A stretch of DNA of 64,000 nt from NCBI GenBank assembly GCA_053919585.1, contig CM132784.1; one strand, given 5' to 3'. Positions 1 through 57,993 of this stretch are shown here, piece by piece. A program made the position numbers and the translations under genes. The notes under the pieces are model-generated. The model was not told the DNA's origin and made no database searches. It saw only the letters and a list, made by a program, of their open reading frames with translations. Within the stretch, counting starts at the first letter, position 1; the number at the start of each line of letters is the position of its first letter. The DNA is from Euprymna scolopes. Taxonomy: Eukaryota.

Positions 1-1152
1 AAAAAATATTCTCTCATTTTTGTTCACAATTAGCATATTCCAAATCTGCATTAAATTTCCTAAAAAAACAAAAAAAAAAATTAAGTCCAGAGCTCAACTA
101 GAAGTTGTTTTATGATATTTTGAAGTTGCCTAGATCGCGAAAACTTTCATGCGCGCACTGTAACCAAGAGATTGCTGCTCTAAATCCAAGCGTTTGCAAA
201 AAATACCCTAAAATGGTCAAAAATTGCTATAAAAGACAGTTTATTCTTTTTCTATGGGTTTGTGGTTGTGAAGAGATCATACCAGAAGAATAATTGCTTT
301 CAAAAGATTAGAGTATATGAAAAATTCAGCATTTCACGGAGAAATTTGAGAAAAATTCACATATAAATTGCTGTTTTTCCGGGGGGGGGGGTGAAATTGA
401 CTAAACCCGGACCTTCAATCCAAAACAAGTCAAAAACGGCTATTCCTCACATATCAAAAGATAGTATTTTCTGAAAGTACAATCTTTACACTTTCAGAAT
501 CTGTCAGTTTTATGATGTGACTCTTAGCCGTTTTTTTAGTTTATTGCTGATCAATTTCAGAGCCAATGTCACAGGTTTCGGATGAAAAAATCAGAGCTCC
601 AATAACTCAACGCAGCAAAAATCCCCAAAAATTACACTAAGGGACAAAAAAAAAGATTTAACATGTTCCTGATTGTTTTAAGAGAGTGGGAGGAGCATAT
701 AAAGAGGATAATTGGTCTTAAGGCAATGTAAAAAAGGAGAAATTGGGGAATTTTTCTCTAAAATCTGACAAAAATAGCATTATTTCCTCCCTATTTTCCC
801 CTAAAAGACAAAAATTTTCCACAAAAAAAAAAAAGGAAAACTCAAAGAATAATCAATATAACCTCTAAACAATATTGTTAGCTACATCCTAGCCAATTTC
901 TACCATTAAAACATGCTTTTAAGTTGATTTATTTCCATTTGTAGCCATTTTCAGGAAATCATATTTGAAAATTCGAAGGTGTAGAATAAAGGGCATTATT
1001 GCAAACTTTTAATTCACATATCTCGACATCCGTACAATCTTTTTCAATTCTCTAAAAAGCAGTATATTTGTGGATTGAAACTCTTAATGCAATGAATAAT
1101 TGAGCCAAGACCCTCCAGCTCTTGACTTGAAATTGATGTCATGAGAGTAGGT

Positions 1153-1298
1153 GTTTCATCATACCTTTCATTGGATAATACTCCCTGCTATTGCATCATA
1201 CATTTATATGCACACTATTGCAACATCAATGTTCCCATGGTATTGCATCATACTTTGTATTGCATCAGATTCATTATTGCATCATATTTGTTGCATCA
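1153..1298 (+). promoter_or_regulatory. Cluster of six C/EBP-ATF (AARE/CARE)-like 9-mers upstream of the transposase
   Basis: GTTTCATCA at 1153; ATTGCATCA at 1190, 1242, 1259, 1276; GTTGCATCA at 1290. Could also be a decayed minisatellite. Confidence 0.35.
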
Positions 1299-1349
1299 TG
1301 TGACTTCTATTTAATCCTCAGATTCTCTTTTTTCTTATAGTTAGTCAAA

Positions 1350-3515
1350 ATGGAAGATAACGCAACTGTATCCACAAACGAACATGAAGTGTTCGAGTTC
1401 ATTGCTGCACACAAAGGTCTTGATTTTGGTGTCACTGAGAACCAGTTCCGTACCGAGAGCAACATCCTTGATTGTGCTGCTTACCAAACCTTCAAAAGTT
1501 GCTGGACTCAGTTCAATCGTCTGAAGGACAAACATGGGAAGAAAGGTGTTGCTTTCATTGTTCTACAAGGTCGATCAGATGCGTACCATTTTGACAAGGC
1601 ACCTACTGTTGAAGGGCCCAAAAAGCGGAGAAAGAGCTTTCCTGATCTCGGTGATAAAATGAAGAAAGAGAGAACTGCTGAAATATATTGATGATCGTGT
1701 TCAGAGGGAATTCCCAGAACTGTCAACAACTCAACTGCTTGGGTACTTAATTCACCGTATCAACCTTCAGTCCAATAAGAGCGTCGCAAGGGTTGGACAC
1801 GAATTATTCCAAGAATCTGCCACATCTTATCTTTCAGCAACGAGGAAGCAGTTGCATTGATGCATAGTTTGACCTTGAGCAGAGATCAAATGAGAAAAAT
1901 GCGCCACCTCTTAGCTACGAAAGGTATTCATTTCCCCACCAGTAACGAGTTGCTTGAAGCAAGAAAGAAGTTGAGACCTGTGATCACACCAGTGCTTGAT
2001 GGCCGTGGTGTTCAAGTCCAATATAAGGAGCTGGTGAAAATGACAGTGGAATCGGTTCTGAAAGTTGCTATGAAGGAGAAGAACATTGATTTTTGTGGTG
2101 GTGAGCTGGAAATGACGTTTAAAGATGGAGGTGATGGTGTAGGACAGCAGGTGGTTTGGAACATCAAGGAGATGTTGGAGAGTAAGGAAAATATGTTTCA
2201 GTACAGTATAATACCACTGAAGCTCGTGTTGCGGAATAAAGAGACAGTCGAAACATTGTGGATCAACCATACACCAAATTCATGCCGCACACTTCGACCA
2301 TTGTTTCTAATCAGGGAGTCTGAAACTGATGAGGATCTCCTGAATCTCGTAATACCCATAACAGACAAGGCACGCTCTGAGCTGAAAGAAGGTGTGTGTG
2401 TGAAATATCAGGAGGACAATGCTGTTAATGTGAAGATAACCATTCATGACTCAATGAAAGATCTCAAATTCAAGAGACATATATCTGGTTTAGGTGGAGC
2501 TGATTGCATCCTTTGTATCAGTCAAATGAAAGATTGGACAGATTGCGAAAAAGTTTCTGCAGGATTTCCAATTGAAAGGTCTGCAGAGGAAACGTGGAAG
2601 CTTTATGAACAGTTGGTTAATGAAGAGGGCGATGTGCCTACTGAAGCAGGAGACTTTGAAGTTTGTCAAGGGCTTACTAAAAAACCACTTACCACATCGG
2701 ACCAAACAAACATCTGCGTCACCCATTCATACATTAATGTCACCACATGGTTTTTGAAAGTTCTGTATCGATGTCATATAGATTACAAGAATTGGGTCCA
2801 GAAATCTGGACCACTTGGTGAACCAATTCGGCAATCCAGAGAAAGAGTACTTGATGCGATTCTTTATGCCACAGGACTTTACCTCGATCGATGCAACAAA
2901 GCAAATGGAAAAGGTGGAATATCAACAGATGGTAACCAGGGGAGACGATTTTTCTCTGAGGATATACTCGGTGCCATCACAGAGTTGCTCTCGGGTCGTT
3001 CCTCCATTAAACATCAAGAAAACATTCTCCTTCTGCATCGCCAACTTTCCACCATTCTGTCTGTTGTGTCGTCTACACAGAAAGTTGACTTGACCAAGCT
3101 CAAGGACTTATGTGACACAGCTACATACAACATAATCGACAATTTTCCTTGGATCAGGATCAACCAAACTTTGCATGGAACACTTCATCACTCAGTCGAG
3201 TTGATTGGTTTGAATGACGGTCACGGTCTTGGAGGTATGTCTGAGGAATGCTTAGAAGCCAACAACAAAGATATTCGGAACTATCTCCAGTTTTTGTCTC
3301 GGAAAATCTCACCTATTGCACAGCTGACAGATGTAATGAGCAGGTTATTAGAACGATCTGATCCTGTCATATGTCAGTTGAGTGCACGAATCCAGCATCC
3401 GAAATATTGCATAGAATGTGGTGCCACTGATCACACTATTCGTTCACATGCTAGACTGTTCAACCTCCCAAAAAGATGGTATTATTCTCTTGTAGAGGAT
3501 ATTCTTTTGAATTAA
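1350..3515 (+). pseudogene. RAG1-core-like (Transib superfamily) transposase, about 720 aa, two N-terminal frameshifts (~1680, ~1830), 552-aa core open
   Basis: Motifs FKDGGDG, MKDLK, CILC, HGTLHH, SEECLEANNK and RSDP parallel RAG1 KESCDG(D600), GYDEK(D708), the Zn ligands and SEGNESGNK(E962). The intervening frame KYIDDRVQREFPELSTTQLLGYLIHRIN aligns with copy B. Confidence 0.88.
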
Positions 3516-4173
3516 TGCAATGCTATTGTCTACCATGAAATGGGTATTGTTCTGCATAGATTTCACTGACCCATGTATTGGTAAGAGTCGTTTTATTCAT
3601 TGTTTCCCTAGTATGTTATAAATCATATTTGCAATGCCTTGTTCAGCTTGTTGAAATGCTTTGTCTCTTTTCTTGATCTTTTTTCTCTTTGATCTTAGCC
3701 ATTAGTTTCAGAAAAATAAAATGAATGGATCGAAAGTTACATGTGTCATGTTCGACCAATTTAGGGCATTTTGACCTATTGTGGCCCTCTCAGGGACCCC
3801 GGAACTTACTGAAAATGGGCAAACAGTGCAGTTTCGGGTGTAAAACATCCATTTTTGAGTTCAGCACCATGGAAAATCACTAAAGAGACATATATATCAA
3901 TAATTTTCAAAAATCTGAGAATGTTAACTACATGCAAAATTTCAGAAAAATACAATGGATAGTCATTGAGAATTTTGGAATGCATGCACGAGGGTGAATT
4001 ATAAGGTCCAAATCCGACTAAAGTCGGGGATATTCTTGGACCCCAAAATGGGAAAAATAGCCTGGAAACCATTTTATTTATGCTCCGATAGTACTCACAG
4101 TGTTGTAAATGATTATTCTGACATAATAAGCCTTTTTTAGGTCGCATAAATCAGTAAAATCTGTGTCACAATC

Positions 4174-4208
4174 CTATTTCCAAAGTTTCGCGATCTTGGC
4201 CCACTGTG
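4174..4208 (-). repeat. Right terminal sequence of copy A: CACAGTG-19 bp-TGGAAATAG
   Basis: Reverse complement reads CACAGTG GGCCAAGATCGCGAAACTT TGGAAATAG. Confidence 0.8.
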
Positions 4209-4930
4209 CATCACTTGGAATTTTAAGCTGAATAATATCATTAAGTTCATGGACGTTTTTGTTTTGAGCTGCAAGAATAGCTCGTTTACTCAACCAACTG
4301 GAATTCTTATAATTAATTTGAATATCTGGATAAATCTTTTTACCAATTCTTCTTTTGATGTAACTAAATTACAGAAGTTAAGAGTCACCATTAACACGGA
4401 TCAGCCGAAACATTTTTGTTGTCAATTTCCCACAATTGATGCAAAAATTTCTCTGCAGATCAAGCGTTCTGCAACTGGACATGCATATTTTGAGTTAAGT
4501 TTAATGTCTTCACATGGGGCCAAAAAGAGTATTTGAGGCAAACATTTATTTCATCTGCTGGTGTTGATTGAGAAATTACAGGTAACGTTTGTCTGAAATC
4601 TCTTACAAGCAATATTACTGCATTCCCAAATGGTCTGACATTACCACTACCACACAAATCTTGCAAGGATCGATCAAGAGTCTCAAGTGATTTTTTTGTG
4701 CATTTCTGTAATATTTTTCCCATGCTGGATGTTTTGGAAATATTGAACATGGGAGTTTTAAAAAATTGAATGTATAATAGTAATTTCAAAGCAGAATGAG
4801 TAGTTCTTCTACCTGGTAGTAAGGTTGCAGCCAATCCGTATGCAGCAAGAGCCAAGACTGTCATTTTGTCATTGAATGGCTGCCAAAATTAATTTAATTA
4901 GAAAGGTTTTACCAGTTCCTCCTGGTGCTG
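4209..4930 (-). mobile_element. Helitron Pif1-like helicase fragment, degenerate
   Basis: APGGTGKTFL Walker A, AATLLPGRRTTHSA, RDFRQTLPV, LTQNMHV and RAILAAQN motifs, with stops and frameshifts. Confidence 0.85.
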
Positions 4931-14171: not shown

Positions 14172-14311
14172 NNNNNNNNNNNNNNNNNNNNNNNNNNNNN
14201 NNNNNNNNNNNNNNNNNNNNNNNNNNNNNNNNNNNNNNNNNNNNNNNNNNNNNNNNNNNNNNNNNNNNNNNNNNNNNNNNNNNNNNNNNNNNNNNNNNNN
14301 NNNNNNNNNNN
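14172..14311. other. Assembly gap (140 N)
   Basis: Run of n. Confidence 1.
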
Positions 14312-53186: not shown

Positions 53187-54848
53187 CAGGGTTGGATCAA
53201 ATACTGACTTTTAACAATTGAAATACAAATACAAATACTTTCGTTAAGGTTACCAGAAATACAAATACAAATACTTTTATTCCTAACTCTAAAAATACAA
53301 ATACAAATACTAACGCTAAAAATACAAATACTTTTATTCCTCAATCTCAAAATACAAATAAAAATACAATAACTGATTTAAACAATCTGAAAATATGCGA
53401 AGAAAAGAAGAAAAAAGAAGAAATATTTCCTTCCAAATTTGACATCTACATTACACTCTATATCATGTCCTCATTGCATTTTATCATCATTAGAGCTCTG
53501 AAAGTTTCCGGGCCAAGTTTGGCTCGCTCTGGGGTATAAAAATTACCAGCCTTGCTGAAAACTCTTTCAGATGGTGCCGATGTTGCACAGCACCCTAGAA
53601 TATTTCTGGCGAAAGGCTTCAAAATCTTGAAGCTCTTGTTTTCTCGCCAGTACCTCAGTGGGTTGACGTCAAAAGCCAGAACACATTCTTCTAAGTAGGA
53701 ATCGAGTTCTGCCTTTACCGCTGTAGTGTCGCTTATTGATGGACTTACATTTAGCTTCCCAGCTGGTGGCATGTAGGCAAAAAGACGAGGGCGTTTTGCA
53801 TTCATGTCAGCCTCGTCTTGATTTGTGTTCACGGTCATGAAAAACTTCCTCTCTTGAACTGTGTTCTTCAAAGACAACTGAGTTGACTGCGAAATAATTA
53901 GGTCCACAATCTTCGAAATATTTTTATTTTTCATTTTTTCACATGACAGCCATGACAGCTTAAACCTGGGGTCCATGACAGCTGCAGTAATGACATCAGT
54001 CCTATCAAGAAACGGATGCAATCTCATTTTGATAGAAGACTGTAGTGCATTAGCCAAGTTTAAGCAGTAGGTTGGTTTACTTTCCATGAATAGTTTGAGG
54101 CTGTGTTCAAGGCCAAATACAACTGGTGCAACGCAAGAAAGTGTCACCATGTTTTCTCCTTCCACTTGCGACATTGCCTCTTGGAATGGGTCCAAAATTT
54201 GCACCACTTCTTTTAGCATTGCTATTTCCACTACGTTCAATTCTCGTATGTTCTTACACGATCCTAGGAGACAAATAGCTGAGTTGACGCCATTGACATC
54301 TTTGAGAACTGACTTAAGCATAGTCAGTTGAGAGTTCCATCTAGTAGCATTAGCAGCCTGCAGTGAAGTCCCAATATTTTCCAAGAACGGTGCTGCCACA
54401 GTAGATCGCCGTATTGCAGCTACAATACTACAGCACTTGTGTATCACAGTTGCAATTGCGCTGCATCTGACACTGGGATCATTGAAGGCATCTCGTATGC
54501 AGATTTGTTGTGTGTGTGCAAAGCAACTGGACCGATCCGGTGGAAGAAGGGCAAGGACTTCATTCAGATCAAGTTCTTCTTCCAAAATATCAAGTTCTTC
54601 TTCCAAAATATCAATGTTATCTATATCACATGTATGTGAACAGGGTTGGATCAAATACTGACTTTTAACAATTGAAATGCAAATACTTTCGTTTAGGTTA
54701 CCAGAAATACAAATACAAATACTTTTACTCCTAAGTCTACAAATACATTTATTCCTAAATCTAAAAATACAAATACAAATACAATTACATTAAAATTGTA
54801 TTTAAATACAATTGAAATACAAATACAATTGTATTTGATCCAACCCTA
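53187..54848 (-). mobile_element. Composite hAT (Ac/ZBED-like) element with 3' transposase remnant 53458-54640 and terminal 208-bp MITE
   Basis: TIR (C/T)AGGGTTGGATCAAATAC at 53187, 54641 and inverted at 54848; AAATAC subterminal arrays; CFAH, TRWNS, MDPRFK and SAPSERVFS motifs; TSD CTGTCTGA / CTGT--GA. Confidence 0.85.
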
Positions 54849-54952
54849 CTGTGATAAATTTTGATTTCATCTCTTTCAGCTTCATCACCAATTCTAAAAG
54901 TAGCCATATCACTACCCTTATTGATATATTTTGTTATGTATTTAATTGCTTT

Positions 54953-57020
54953 GTAAGTAAGGCAAACTCCTTCTGACAACAGTTGAGCTCGAGCAGTATC
55001 AGTAGATGGAATCACAAAGTTCAAAGGGTCCTCGTCTGTTTCTTCCTCTCTTATCAAGAAGAGAGGACGTAGAAACCTGCAGTTGTTAGGAGCGAGGTTC
55101 TGCCAAAGAATTTTGGTAGTGTTATCATTGAATCGTCGTTGGAGTTTCAGGGGTGTAATGCCATACTGGAACATGTTTTCTTCAGCATCAAGCATATTTG
55201 TAAAGTTCCACACAACCTGCTGACCTGCACCATCGCAACCATCTTTAAAGATCATTTCCAGGATACCATCCTTCTTCTCTATCTCTTCAGGTGGAACCAA
55301 ACCAAGAATCGATGAAATTGTAATCTTAACCACATCTATGTACTGGACCTGGACTCCTCTGTCGTTGAGAACAGGAGAAATAACTGGACGGAGTTTCTTT
55401 CTTCCCTCTAACAACTCATTACTAGTAGGAAAGTAAATTCCTTTGGCAGCCAATAAGTTTCTCATCTTCCTCATCTGGTCCCTGCTAAGTGTCAGCGAGT
55501 GCATAATAGCGATAGCCTCGTCCACTTCAAAGGAGCGTGCGTTCGTGATGCTGGAGGTAAAGATCTCATGACCGACTTTGGCAATCTTCTTCTCGGACTG
55601 AATGTTAATTCTATGAATCAGATATCCAAGTAGCTGGGTGACACTCAATTCAGGGCATTCTTGTTGGACATAGTCACTGATGTGTTGAAGAAGAGATTCA
55701 GTTCTTTCCTTCTGCATCCGGGAGCCCAAATCAACAAATTTTCCTGCGTTTCTTTTGTGGTTCTACTGAAAGTGGACACTTTCTTTCGAAGTCGGTTGTT
55801 AATTTTGAAGCCTGCTCGAGGATTTTAGCGGTTCCCACTTTAGCATTTTTTAAACGCCCGAAACGCTTCCAACCTGTCATAAAGAATGTTGTCACTTCTT
55901 CACACTCCTTAATACCATGCGTGTCCATGAAATGTTGCAGACATTTTTTTATACTCAGGAGATTTGTTTCTGCTGATCTGAGAAGCCACATCAATGATTG
56001 ACTGGAAAATGTGGTACTCAGAAACAGCTGTGCGATCATCATCTACAATGGATGCCATCTTTGATCTGTTGATAGAGATATACAGATAATCAATTACAAG
56101 ATGATATTGATAAAGCATGAAACAACATTATACTAACACTAGATAATGCCACGTTACCTCCCCTTGCTAATGATCTATGATCCTAATTCTAAATGCAGGC
56201 AAGTTGATTAAACTAAATTATCACAATCAACACAAAGAACACATCAACACAAAGATTGAATGTTAGCTATTTCCTATGGAATTCACTGGAAAGAGCTCAA
56301 TGGAGGAAAGATACCATTTTTTACAGAACTCAAAAACCTTGTTTTGTTCTTAAACAATGTGAATTTCAAAATTGTCGAAAAACCTTGTTTCGCCAATTTG
56401 GCTCCAAATATAGATAAATTGAATTTCAAGGTAATTTTTCAACAATAAATCGTATTCAAACCGCTAATAGTGACAAGTCAAACTGAACATTTTTTAAACC
56501 TCATCCTAAATTTTTCAAAACATATATGGTTTAGTATGTCACTATTAGCGGTTTTCTTGCTAATTGCAGGGTTATTCATAAATTATCGTGCATTTTTTGC
56601 AAAAAATATGGCTATTTTCGGTCATTTTTTGCTAATTTTGGATAATTTTTTGGCCAAAATTTGGATTTTTATCATATTAAATATAGTTTGAATGGCCTAA
56701 ATCACATATCTAAAGGTATATTAGTCAATTGATGATACAATCATAAGTATTTTGCCTCTTCTACCATAGGAAATTCGTAATCTGAACCGATCAGCAATTT
56801 TTACCAATTTTTAGCTTTGCCGTAATCATATCGTTCCGCGATGCGACGCGTGACCGAATTTGGCATGATTTCAAATTGCGATAGAATCTCTCCACGATGT
56901 GCTAGAGACCTAATTTTTTTTTTTGTTGATTCAGAAATTGGATGGAGATGACGTTTATAGCTTGTAAAAATCTTTGTTGAGACTTTTATTTTGGCTATTT
57001 CCACCTCTGGGCCCACTGTG
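54953..57020 (-). mobile_element. RAG1-like/Transib copy B, 5' half only
   Basis: Left terminus CACAGTGGGCCCAGAGG at 57020; transposase from about 56058 (MASIV) is clearly homologous to copy A (MHSLTLSRDQMRKMR, FKDGCDG, LRPLFL); truncated after GVCLTY. Confidence 0.88.
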
Positions 57021-57993
57021 CCACATGGGCCATGGATTAGTTGTGTTTTGATGATATCAAAAATAATTGGATCAGCAGTTTCATCTGGCAGCTCAGCTGA
57101 AATAATTTTGTCTATGTCATCTAATGTTCTCTTTACACCAAATCAGGGTGTGAGAGTGAGGAAGTCCTCTCTTTTACCACTCACTTGTTGTCATGCAAGC
57201 ATTTAATTCACCAAAAATGTTTCCTTCCTTGATTAGCCAGAGAAATTTTTTAGCTTTTCATGAAATACCCGAGCAATTAAGTCATGGCGATCCTTGGTTG
57301 TTTGGTATTGAAAAAGTTCATCTTTGATTTCAGTCGACTTGGGATTACAAGTAAATGTAATAAAAAGATCAGCACGACCAAATTTTCTGATATAAGCTAT
57401 TGCATCCTGAATTCTTTGATGCATATATCGCGGTCCTCCTGTGTAGGTTGAAGGCAAGATAATTGGCTGTCCAATATTTGTATGATCACCATCAGAATTT
57501 ATAGCATCTCTTAGGTGTATATAATCATCCACTCTTAATTTTTTTTGATTTCTGTATGAAACCTAATCTTTCGGTTTCTATTTTCGCACACATGTCCACC
57601 ATGAATTGACTGGTCACTTATTTTAAAGATAAAATATGATTACAGTCATCTCTAGCCATGAAAAGAAATGAATAAAAACATTTTGCTGTAACTAATCGAT
57701 TATTATCAAGACCTGTTACTGGGTTTTTTTTGACAGAGCTGAAAATGATACCCATCTTGACCATTCCAGAAAATAAGTGGGTATTGAAGTGCATCATAGG
57801 CTCTGTGAGTCTCAGCAATACGTCGCAATTGTCCACTTCTTAATTGCAAAATAATGTCTACATGTTCATGTTCCTCATCCATCATTAAGATTGCAATTTC
57901 ATCTGTCACAGGTGCATTGTATCTCCGTTCATGTTCTCCAGATGGACGCTTGTCTGCTCTTATGATGATTTTTTGATTTTCCATATGCTGCAT

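What the first reader, a model, noticed from the sequence alone, without database searches (positions are those of the whole stretch)
1350..3515. RAG1-like transposase family with an NBD-like helix, an extra N-terminal domain and a CTT-like C-terminal Zn knuckle, but no RAG2L
Seen: intact D-D-E core with CxxC/HxxxxH Zn ligands; a basic KKRRKSFPDLGDKMKKERT segment at the NBD position; a ~90-aa N-terminal domain shared with copy B; C-terminal CIEC-x4-H-x4-H (3408-3459). Known: invertebrate RAG1L proteins carry a C-x2-C-x3-GH-x4-C tail, which compact Transibs generally lack. Only ~700 bp separate the stop from the right end, so there is no room for a convergent RAG2L. Inference: an intermediate between Transib and RAG1L, present as at least two subfamilies.
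Basis: partly seen in the sequence, partly recalled or inferred. Interest (0 to 1): 0.75.

Follow-up and report, generated by a model that had tools for sequence, protein, structure and literature searches.

The report
Decayed Subgroup-I Transib transposon copy
This is a broken copy of a single-gene Transib jumping gene (a relative of the antibody-gene recombinase RAG1) whose RAG1-like extras are real, but Transibs with these extras were described in 2022, so it is a new member of a known kind.

Summary
Window 1350-3515 (+) encodes a RAG1/Transib-type DDE transposase in three pieces. Two frame-breaking gaps separate them, and contigs of two independent studies confirm both gaps. The D-D-E triad, the CxxC and HxxxxH zinc ligands, a basic arm leading into an NBD-like three-helix domain, a folded ~87-aa N-terminal domain and a C-terminal Cx2Cx4Hx4H knuckle are all present. 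All are conserved in about 90 relatives. These include intact 720-750-aa proteins, one of them from the octopod Argonauta hians. The right end, CACAGTG + 19 bp + TGGAAATAG, lies 693 bp after the stop, and there is no second gene.

The protein keeps the alpha11-alpha12 zinc-domain segment that HzTransib lacks, has a RAG1L-type knuckle tail, and its family has 10/19 asymmetric ends. Tao et al. 2022 defined "Subgroup I Transibs" by these features and already called them Transib-to-RAG1L intermediates. The family scores closer to HzTransib than to RAG1L. The N-terminal domain and knuckle tail are shared with a canonical-CCGHC lineage that includes a Hydra vulgaris protein. The only local twist is a clade-wide Cys-to-His change in the last ligand.

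This scan has already reported the same kind of element on other DNA of this genome.

The parts
1..1349 (+). 5' non-coding part of copy A. The left terminus itself lies about 27 nt before window position 1, outside the window.
   Evidence: L001 5-3647 aligns to window 72-3703 at 91.7%. In copy B the left heptamer lies 71 nt upstream of the stretch that matches copy A 44-87.
1350..1610 (+). N-terminal domain, about 87 aa, with two strands and four helices. It has no conserved Cys or His and no confident known fold.
   Evidence: AF2 pLDDT is 84-93 in the whole-protein model and 85.7 for the domain alone. Foldseek on PDB finds nothing with E below 1, ESM Atlas TM-scores stay below 0.5, and the best VIA-align 2 Z is 5.6. 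An HMM of the domain hits the N-termini of the CCGHC-tailed P0129 family, including a Hydra vulgaris protein.
1620..1676 (+). Basic arm at the start of the NBD-like domain (KKRRKSFPDLGDKMKKERT).
   Evidence: The family consensus is (K)(K)(R)RKSFxDLGDRxKKxRT, with K99 and F101 nearly invariant and no GRP motif. Model residue 94 onward aligns to mouse RAG1 390 onward.
1668..1672 (+). First frame break: a net 8 nt are missing relative to the intact relative L001. In-frame stops follow at 1689-1694.
   Evidence: DNA alignment to the L001 coding sequence. Contigs of runs X1 and X2 reproduce the window here with no differences and no gaps.
1681..1854 (+). Second coding piece, in a shifted frame: the helices of the NBD-like domain.
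   Evidence: Translation. Copy B matches it at 65%. The model shows helices 106-127, 133-145 and 150-160.
1825..1825 (+). Second frame break: 4 nt are missing relative to L001, which returns the reading to frame 0.
1794..3512 (+). Third coding piece: DDBD, pre-RNase H, RNase H (DDE), zinc-binding domain, CTD and tail.
   Evidence: Pfam RAG1 E=1.7e-9. PDB phmmer gives HzTransib 1.1e-26, BbeRAG1L 6.8e-11 and RAG1 3e-5. VIA-align 2 Z is 31.8 for HzTransib, 31.3 for RAG1 and 28.9 for BbeRAG1L.
2133..2135 (+). Catalytic Asp 1, in KDGGDG; equivalent to RAG1 D600.
   Evidence: Invariant D270 in alignment A1. Alignments. Coordinates.
2460..2462 (+). Catalytic Asp 2, in MKDLK; equivalent to RAG1 D708.
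   Evidence: Invariant D380..
2505..2516 (+). ZnC2 ligands CxxC, in GGADCILC.
   Evidence: Invariant C395 and C398. Coordinates.
2574..2690 (+). Equivalent of RAG1 alpha11-alpha12, the segment of the zinc-binding domain that HzTransib lacks.
   Evidence: Profile positions 427-483 have no counterpart in HzTransib (residues 239-256), but the alignment runs straight through them in BbeRAG1L and RAG1. The segment is colinear with 'LVNSSGEVPTKPGDWYTRFGV' of MleTransib_3931.
3174..3191 (+). ZnH2 ligands HxxxxH, in LHGTLHH.
   Evidence: Invariant H618 and H623. Coordinates.
3246..3248 (+). Catalytic Glu, in SEECLE; equivalent to RAG1 E962.
   Evidence: Invariant E642..
3408..3449 (+). C-terminal zinc knuckle Cx2Cx4Hx4H. 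It has the spacing of the RAG1L Cx2Cx3GHx4C motif, with His as the last ligand.
   Evidence: Conserved in nearly all full-length relatives. A profile of the tail hits CCHC knuckles in the PDB, with HIV NC at 3e-5 and TUT4/7 and Lin28 below it. Distant relatives carry the canonical CCGHC motif at the same place.
3480..3512 (+). Acidic-hydrophobic terminal helix (YYSLVEDILLN). The stop codon follows at 3513-3515.
   Evidence: Conserved D(S)LVEDILL ending. Model helix 719-727. The HzTransib structural alignment runs to model residue 730.
3704..4172 (+). 3' non-coding segment not shared with L001. It contains a high-copy repeat at about 3904-4111.
   Evidence: Contig depth is 924-1294 at 3904-4111.
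4174..4208 (-). Right terminal inverted repeat: heptamer CACAGTG (4208-4202), 19-bp spacer, 9-mer TGGAAATAG (4182-4174).
   Evidence: L001 has the same layout at its right end. Contigs from other loci diverge exactly at 4209-4212.
4209..4213 (+). Candidate 5-bp target-site duplication, CATCA. Only the right copy can be seen.
   Evidence: Contigs of the uninterrupted flanking repeat read ...GTATGTGACTA|CATCACTTGG.
54950..57020 (-). Copy B, a second subfamily. It has a left TIR of CACAGTG (57020-57014) + 10 bp + TGGAAATAG (57003-56995), an N-terminal-domain ORF at 55731-56042 and a main ORF at 54785-55729. It carries one frameshift, and homology to the family ends at about 54950.
   Evidence: It is 65% identical to copy A and 84% to P0053. 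A hAT fragment follows at 53461-54654.

Best explanation
Copy A is a dead copy of a single-gene Transib DNA transposon of the Subgroup I type defined by Tao et al. 2022.

The intact protein of its family is 720-750 aa long. In order, it contains:
- a small N-terminal domain of unknown fold;
- a disordered linker;
- a basic arm plus a three-helix NBD-like domain;
- the RAG1-type core (DDBD, pre-RNase H, RNase H with D-D-E, and a zinc-binding domain that keeps the alpha11-alpha12 segment);
- the CTD;
- a CCHH zinc knuckle;
- a short terminal helix.

By inference from HzTransib, BbeRAGL and RAG, a dimer would bind the two bipartite ends (heptamer CACAGTG, then a 10- or 19-bp spacer, then the 9-mer TGGAAATAG). 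It would cut by nicking and hairpin formation and insert with a 5-bp duplication. The knuckle would clamp the heptamer-proximal DNA and the NBD-like domain would read the 9-mer.

This copy can no longer do any of that. It has two frame-breaking gaps and four substitutions at highly conserved residues. It sits inside a high-copy repeat next to a Helitron-type PIF1 helicase fragment.

Shown: homology, fold, conserved residues, element ends, single-gene content and decay. Inferred: zinc binding by the knuckle, the DNA contacts and the cutting chemistry.
For: Family assignment:
- Pfam RAG1 matches.
- A profile of 33 relatives scores 206 bits on HzTransib, 146 on BbeRAG1L and 85 on RAG1.
- The AF2 model of P0001 has pLDDT 88.5. 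VIA-align 2 gives Z 31.8 to HzTransib (model 167-730) and Z 31.3 to mouse RAG1 (model 94-692 against RAG1 390-1007, which includes the NBD).
- D270, D380, E642, C395, C398, H618 and H623 are invariant.

Subgroup I features:
- The alpha11-alpha12 segment is present.
- The knuckle tail is conserved.
- The TIRs are asymmetric at 10/19 bp in this window, in L001 and L007, and in mirrored order in L003 and L004.
- The protein is colinear with the published Subgroup I protein MleTransib_3931.
- Tao 2022 and Martin 2023 describe exactly these features in Transibs.

Single gene: no other long ORF lies in the element or in the complete element L003 729-5765.

Decay:
- The frame breaks are confirmed by contigs of two studies.
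- The invariant R448 is changed to C, with three other changes at conserved columns.
- No RNA read at 99% identity or more was found in a polyA run of the same organism label.

Mobility of the family:
- Intact 730-aa relatives exist, including Argonauta hians GAB1599992.1.
- dN/dS against L001 is 0.22.
Against: I made no tree with the published Subgroup I, Subgroup II and RAG1L reference proteins, so placement in Subgroup I rests on diagnostic features and not on phylogeny.

The knuckle is CCHH, not the CCGHC that defines CTT1. The basic arm has RRK where RAG1 has GRPR/K.

Copy A's left end and left target duplication lie outside the window.

No biochemical data exist for any member of this clade.
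Confidence: 0.85

Rival explanations
1. The CCHH-tailed clade is a third, undescribed Transib lineage. It would be neither Subgroup I nor Subgroup II, would branch closer to RAG1L, and would have its own N-terminal domain and knuckle variant. That would make it a genuinely new intermediate.
For: With tails removed, the CCHH proteins form one clade (SH-aLRT 99) separate from the CCGHC-tailed relatives I could retrieve. Motif searches found no near-identical sequence in the supplementary sequences of Tao 2022. No paper among the top-ranked results of my search links Transib to cephalopods.
Against: The N-terminal domain, the NBD-like arm, alpha11-alpha12, the knuckle position and the terminal helix are all shared with CCGHC-tailed lineages. 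These include a Hydra vulgaris protein and the published MleTransib_3931. The only difference is one ligand, Cys to His. The profile scores higher on HzTransib than on BbeRAG1L.
Confidence: 0.1
2. It is a solitary RAG1L gene: the remnant of a two-gene RAGL transposon that lost RAG2L.
For: It has a knuckle tail, an NBD-like domain and the alpha11-alpha12 segment that binds RAG2 in RAG1. Its structural Z to RAG1 is as high as to HzTransib.
Against: - Complete elements of the family carry one gene between intact ends.
- The family profile scores 206 bits on HzTransib against 146 on BbeRAG1L.
- It has no RAG1-type N-terminal non-core elements: no conserved Cys or His in the N-terminal domain and no Pfam match.
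- Martin 2020 uses the absence of RAG1 N-terminal non-core elements, together with low identity to RAG1/RAG1L, to tell Transib from RAG1L.
Confidence: 0.03
3. It is a host gene domesticated from a Transib and not a mobile element.
For: dN/dS against the relative L001 is 0.22. The protein is conserved across distant hosts.
Against: This copy is frameshifted and has lost an invariant residue. The family is multi-copy, with intact bipartite TIRs and different flanks in different contigs. The window holds two decayed copies nested among Helitron and hAT fragments. Selection on active master copies explains the low dN/dS.
Confidence: 0.02

Closest known systems
Subgroup I Transib transposons (Tao et al. 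2022, Natl Sci Rev 9:nwac073), e.g. MleTransib_3931 and HvuTransib-9
   Same: Both are single-gene elements. They share a RAG1-like core that keeps the alpha11-alpha12 zinc-domain segment, an NBD equivalent, a zinc-knuckle C-terminal tail followed by an acidic-hydrophobic end, and asymmetric bipartite TIRs that start with CAC. About 100 aa precede the NBD.
   Different: The last knuckle ligand is His (Cx2Cx4Hx4H) across the whole clade, where CTT1 has Cx2Cx3GHx4C. The hosts appear to be molluscs and crustaceans. Spacers are 10 and 19 bp.
HzTransib (Helicoverpa zea Transib, PDB 6pqn/6pqx), a Subgroup II Transib
   Same: It is the best sequence and structure match for the core: profile 206 bits, Z 31.8, rmsd 2.8 over 469 residues. 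The D-D-E triad and zinc ligands are the same, and it is also a single-gene element.
   Different: HzTransib starts at the DDBD (its residue 21 corresponds to model residue 167), so it has neither the N-terminal domain nor the NBD-like domain. It lacks the roughly 40 extra residues of alpha11-alpha12. Its tail is classed by Tao et al. as the different CTT2 type.
BbeRAG1L of the amphioxus ProtoRAG transposon (PDB 6b40) and other invertebrate RAG1L
   Same: The core fold matches (Z 28.9). Both have the alpha11-alpha12 segment, an NBD-like domain without GRPR/K and a zinc-knuckle CTT. In BbeRAG1L that tail is a DNA clamp needed for cleavage.
   Different: RAG1L works with a convergent RAG2L gene, which is absent here. 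RAG1L has a long N-terminal region with Cys pairs and a RING finger, also absent here. Sequence similarity is lower than to HzTransib.
Vertebrate RAG1 core (e.g. PDB 5zdz, 3jbw)
   Same: The domain order from NBD to CTD superposes: model 94-692 on RAG1 390-1007, Z 31.3. The catalytic and zinc residues are the same. The ends are heptamer-like, with two spacer lengths.
   Different: Identity is 18-20%. RAG1 has an acidic tail in place of a knuckle, depends on RAG2 and is a domesticated host gene.

Membership tests
Transib superfamily (RAG1-like DDE transposons) | RNase H-fold core with the D-D-E triad homologous to RAG1 and Transib transposases | tested here: met
   Pfam RAG1 E=1.7e-9. HzTransib scores 1.1e-26 with the single sequence and 9e-60 with the profile. 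VIA-align 2 Z is 31.8. D270, D380 and E642 are invariant.
Transib superfamily (RAG1-like DDE transposons) | Zinc-binding domain with CxxC and HxxxxH ligands | tested here: met
   C395, C398, H618 and H623 are invariant. They lie at window 2505-2516 and 3174-3191.
Transib superfamily (RAG1-like DDE transposons) | Terminal inverted repeats that begin with a CAC heptamer resembling the RSS | tested here: met
   The right end of copy A is CACAGTG at 4208-4202. The left end of copy B is CACAGTG at 57020-57014. L001, L003, L004 and L007 show the same heptamer. The left end of copy A lies outside the window.
Transib superfamily (RAG1-like DDE transposons) | 5-bp target-site duplication | tested here: inconclusive
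   Only the right flank, CATCA at 4209-4213, is visible. Contigs of the uninterrupted flanking repeat join exactly there. The left flank is outside the window and copy B has lost its right end.
Transib superfamily (RAG1-like DDE transposons) | One gene only, with no RAG2-like partner | tested here: met
   No other ORF over about 120 aa lies inside the element, and the single antisense ORF of 119 aa lies within the transposase gene. L001 and the complete element L003 729-5765 carry one gene each.
Subgroup I Transib (Tao et al. 2022) | Retains the alpha11-alpha12 region of the zinc-binding domain | tested here: met
   Profile positions 427-483 have no counterpart in HzTransib but align through BbeRAG1L and RAG1. 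The single-sequence alignment shows the same. Window 2574-2690.
Subgroup I Transib (Tao et al. 2022) | CTT1-type C-terminal tail (zinc knuckle Cx2Cx3GHx4C) | tested here: inconclusive
   The position and spacing are the same and the tail profile hits CCHC knuckles. However, the ligand set is CCHH and Asp usually replaces Gly before the His. Relatives outside the clade carry the canonical CCGHC motif at this place.
Subgroup I Transib (Tao et al. 2022) | Asymmetric TIRs | tested here: met
   Heptamer + 10 bp + 9-mer at one end and heptamer + 19 bp + 9-mer at the other, seen in copy B (left), copy A (right), L001, L007, L003 and L004.
Subgroup I Transib (Tao et al. 2022) | Clusters with Subgroup I reference proteins in a core phylogeny | not testable with these tools
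   The reference proteins exist only as text in the paper's supplement and could not be passed to the tree tools. Indirect support: the protein is colinear with MleTransib_3931, and its N-terminal domain and tail are shared with the family of a Hydra vulgaris protein.
RAG1L of RAGL (ProtoRAG-type) transposons | Convergently oriented RAG2-like (kelch + PHD) gene in the same element | tested here: not met
   Only 693 bp lie between the stop and the right end, with no ORF in them. Intact relatives are single-gene.
RAG1L of RAGL (ProtoRAG-type) transposons | N-terminal non-core region with Cys pairs and a RING/ZDD zinc finger | tested here: not met
   The N-terminal domain is 87 aa with no invariant Cys or His and no Pfam match. 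Its fold searches find only noise-level rows, many of them winged-helix proteins.
RAG1L of RAGL (ProtoRAG-type) transposons | Core more similar to RAG1L and RAG1 than to Transib transposases | tested here: not met
   Profile scores are 206 bits for HzTransib, 146 for BbeRAG1L and 85 for RAG1.

The most novel reading that the evidence does not exclude
The CCHH-tailed proteins, at least 37 cluster representatives, come from an octopod, a krill and marine metagenome assemblies. They could form a distinct, undescribed Transib lineage. It would combine a conserved N-terminal domain of new fold, an NBD-like reader and a His-substituted knuckle with 10/19 bipartite ends. That would be a living stand-in for the predicted ancestor that used both DNA-binding modes, and natural intact copies are available for testing a spacer-pairing rule.
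Probability: 0.12. Interest if true: 0.5.

Novelty: new member of a known kind. Interest (0 to 1): 0.3.

Why it matters
Single-gene Transibs with RAG1L-like extras are the closest surviving models for the step before a RAG2-like gene was captured on the way to V(D)J recombination. This copy is dead and adds nothing by itself.

Its family is more useful. It has natural intact members, such as P0001 and Argonauta hians GAB1599992.1, and clean 10/19 asymmetric ends. It also carries an NBD-like domain and a knuckle tail together. That makes it a convenient system for asking which module reads which part of the end, and whether a 12/23-like pairing rule predates RAG2.

The clade-wide Cys-to-His change in the knuckle and the uncharacterised N-terminal domain are small, testable additions to the 2022 description.

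Tried and rejected
- **Reference phylogeny.** I wanted a tree with the published Subgroup I, Subgroup II and RAG1L proteins. They are held only as text in the supplement of Tao 2022 and could not be typed into a tool. Motif searches of that supplement found no near-identical family member.
- **Protein searches for named references.** Searches with P0085 and with the mixed alignment A4 reached only related Transib lineages, plus one named Hydra vulgaris protein. They reached no RAG1L and no HzTransib-like proteins.
- **Exhaustive representative search.** Not run. The operators reserve it for open cases, and this protein is not open.
- **N-terminal domain fold.** Foldseek on PDB, the ESM Atlas by shape and by features, and VIA-align 2 wide all gave only noise-level rows (best Z 5.6, TM below 0.5, feature score 0.77). 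Many were winged-helix proteins at Z about 4. I name no fold.
- **Knuckle tail as a single sequence against PDB.** Nothing significant. Only the profile did.
- **Frameshifts.** I used the natural intact relative P0001 instead.
- **HzTransib structure paper (PMC6872938).** Not held.
- **Assembly error as the cause of the frameshifts.** Rejected: contigs of two studies match exactly.
- **A second small gene in the 1.35-kb 5' region.** Rejected: only short unconserved ORFs, here and in L001.
Full report
**What is there.** On the + strand the coding region is in three pieces: 1350-1688 (frame 0, ended by two stops at 1689-1694), 1681-1854 (shifted frame) and 1794-3512 (frame 0, stop at 3513-3515). 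The long piece matches Pfam RAG1 (PF12940) at E=1.7e-9, 36.8 bits against a cut-off of 25. Among solved structures it matches HzTransib at 1.1e-26, amphioxus RAG1L at 6.8e-11 and RAG1 at 3e-5. A second, diverged copy (copy B) lies on the minus strand at 54950-57020. It is about 65% identical in protein, has one frameshift, and its homology to the family ends at about 54950, next to a hAT fragment.

**Relatives and the state of this copy.** The word-based protein search found 88 relatives, many of them intact at 720-750 aa. The closest, P0001 (730 aa), is about 94% identical. It is a single uninterrupted ORF on contig L001. Its 90% cluster includes GAB1599992.1 of the octopod Argonauta hians. 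A 48%-identical relative comes from the krill Meganyctiphanes norvegica, and others come from marine metagenome assemblies.

Against the L001 coding sequence the window copy is 95.3% identical. It lacks a net 8 nt near 1668-1672 and 4 nt near 1825, and all other gaps are multiples of three. Contigs from two different studies of the same coded organism cover 1200-2288 and 1535-2180 with no differences and no gaps. The frame breaks are therefore real.

The copy also carries four substitutions at columns that are at least 90% conserved in the family, including the invariant R448 changed to C. The overall dN/dS against L001 is 0.22, which fits divergence between selected master copies followed by decay. 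In a polyA RNA run of the same organism label only 8 reads were laid, none at 99% identity or more. I see no expression of this copy.

**Element boundaries.**
- L001 5-3647 aligns to window 72-3703 at 91.7% and again at the last 37 bp.
- The right end reads, in element orientation, CACAGTG (4208-4202) + 19 bp + TGGAAATAG (4182-4174). L001 has the same layout.
- Copy B's left end reads CACAGTG + 10 bp + TGGAAATAG (57020-56995).
- L007 shows the 10-bp form on the left. The more distant P0025 family has complete elements with 19 bp on the left and 10 bp on the right around a related 9-mer.
- Contigs from other loci diverge from the window exactly at 4209-4212, and depth jumps to thousands beyond that point. 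The element therefore ends at 4208 and sits in a high-copy repeat next to a PIF1-helicase fragment. CATCA at 4209-4213 is a candidate target duplication.
- By comparison with copy B, copy A's left end should lie about 27 nt before the window starts. I cannot see it.
Neither this copy nor intact relatives hold a second gene.

**Architecture.** I did not repair the frameshifts. I used the natural intact relative P0001 with an alignment of 33 full-length proteins. The AlphaFold model is confident (pLDDT 88.5, pTM 0.75). VIA-align 2 gives three near-equal top matches:

| Structure | Z | rmsd | Model residues | Chain residues |
|---|---|---|---|---|
| HzTransib 6pqx_A | 31.8 | 2.8 | 167-730 | 21-498 |
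| Mouse RAG1 5zdz_C | 31.3 | 5.1 | 94-692 | 390-1007 |
| BbeRAG1L 6b40_A | 28.9 | 3.0 | 168-701 | 545-1117 |

The three helices at 106-160, preceded by the basic arm, therefore occupy the place of the RAG1 nonamer-binding domain. HzTransib has nothing there.

The basic arm is conserved as (K)(K)(R)RKSFxDLGDRxKKxRT, with K99 and F101 nearly invariant, but it has no GRP motif. D270, D380, E642, C395, C398, H618 and H623 are invariant. They map to window 2133-2135, 2460-2462, 3246-3248, 2505-2516 and 3174-3191.

In the profile comparison, positions 427-483 have no counterpart in HzTransib but align straight through BbeRAG1L and RAG1. This is the alpha11-alpha12 segment of the zinc-binding domain (window 2574-2690).

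**The tail.** CIECGATDHTIRSH (3408-3449) is a Cx2Cx4Hx4H motif. It is present in nearly all full-length relatives. A sub-branch has one residue less between the second Cys and the first His, and three members have lost the motif. A profile of the tail hits retroviral, TUT4/7 and Lin28 CCHC knuckles (best E=3e-5).

More distant relatives carry the canonical Cx2Cx3GHx4C motif at the same position. These are the P0085 group and the P0129 group, which includes a Hydra vulgaris protein. The same acidic-hydrophobic last helix follows the motif. In a tree built without the tails, the CCHH proteins form one clade (SH-aLRT 99) apart from the CCGHC-tailed ones. The Cys-to-His change in the last ligand is thus a clade character, not decay in this copy.

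**The N-terminal domain.** Residues 1-87 fold confidently into two strands and four helices (pLDDT 84-93; 85.7 when predicted alone). The domain has no conserved Cys or His and no convincing structural match: Foldseek E above 1, Atlas TM below 0.5, best VIA-align 2 Z 5.6, with many winged-helix proteins at Z about 4, which is noise level.

Copy B shares the domain. An HMM built from the CCHH clade finds it at the N-termini of the CCGHC-tailed P0129 family at E=1e-11 to 1e-5, including the Hydra vulgaris protein. It is therefore older than this clade. By eye, the published MleTransib_3931 protein also has about 100 residues of similar pattern before its NBD start. A 2026 preprint surveyed Transib N-terminal extensions and found them structurally diverse and unlike the RAG1 zinc-finger domain.

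**Comparison with what is known.** Tao et al. 2022 split Transibs into two subgroups:
- Subgroup II includes HzTransib. It lost alpha11-alpha12 and has a different tail, CTT2.
- Subgroup I keeps alpha11-alpha12, has the RAG1L-type CTT1 knuckle tail and always has asymmetric TIRs.

[quoted passage not shown] Martin et al. 2023 state that asymmetric TIRs, the CCGHC tail and the NBD have all been identified in Transibs. Martin et al. [quoted passage not shown]

The present family meets the Subgroup I features and fails the RAG1L ones: it has no RAG2L, no RING or Cys-pair N-terminus, and its core is closer to HzTransib. The knuckle counts as met only in the variant CCHH form.

The gap in my case is a phylogeny with the reference proteins, which I could not run. 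I leave about 10% for the clade being a separate lineage.

**Mechanism.** The chemistry is inferred from HzTransib, BbeRAGL and RAG. A dimer synapses the two ends, nicks at the heptamer, forms hairpins on the flanks and integrates with a 5-bp duplication. By analogy with BbeRAG1L, where the knuckle tail is a DNA clamp needed for cleavage, the CCHH knuckle should bind heptamer-proximal DNA. The NBD-like domain on its flexible linker should reach the 9-mer at 10 or 19 bp. None of this was tested, and this copy cannot make the protein.

**Earlier notes of this scan.** Other agents reported the same kind of element elsewhere in this genome and the end motifs in this window. I re-derived the ends and read the 2022 paper myself. 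My results agree with theirs.

**Verdict.** This is a real, well-described observation of an ordinary object: a decayed copy of a Subgroup-I-type Transib. It is a new member of a known kind. Two small additions are worth a line in a survey: the clade-wide CCHH knuckle and the conserved N-terminal domain of unknown fold.

Noticed in passing
window 4209-4864: Copy A is inserted in a very high-copy repeat: contig depth is about 6900 at 4216-4300. A PIF1-like helicase ORF lies at 4463-4864 (-) (Pfam E=3.4e-20), so the host element is probably a Helitron. Contigs of uninterrupted copies give the empty-site sequence.
   Followed up: partly
window 57236-57532 and 53461-54654: Copy B is flanked on its left by a Helitron_like_N ORF (E=3.4e-26). 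Homology to the family ends next to a hAT transposase fragment with the C-terminal dimerisation domain (E=5.6e-16). Both Transib copies thus lie next to Helitron pieces.
   Followed up: partly
window 3704-4172: The 3' non-coding part of copy A differs from L001 3648-4361 and holds a high-copy repeat at about 3904-4111 (depth 924-1294). An RNA-library contig of a 'mollusc metagenome' run spans 3281-4212 with this version, so it is a subfamily variant and not unique to this locus.
   Followed up: no
L003 729-5765 and L004 95-5005: In the P0025 family the long (19-bp) spacer is at the left end and the short (10-bp) one at the right end. This is the reverse of the cephalopod-type family. The 9-mer is TGGTAAAAC.
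   Followed up: no
P0001 161-202, P0025 197-274, P0036 154-208: The NBD-like region gives weak, sub-threshold Pfam matches to DUF1280 (E=0.007-0.05). This may hint at a remote link between that family of unknown function and Transib NBD-like domains, or it may be chance.
   Followed up: no
protein cluster of P0063: The 90% cluster of the Transib fragment P0063 lists three short proteins named 'RNA chaperone Hfq, partial [Escherichia coli]'. This looks like a clustering or low-complexity artefact of the collection, not biology.
   Followed up: no
window 14172-14311: A run of 140 N (assembly gap or masked stretch). I left it untouched.
   Followed up: no
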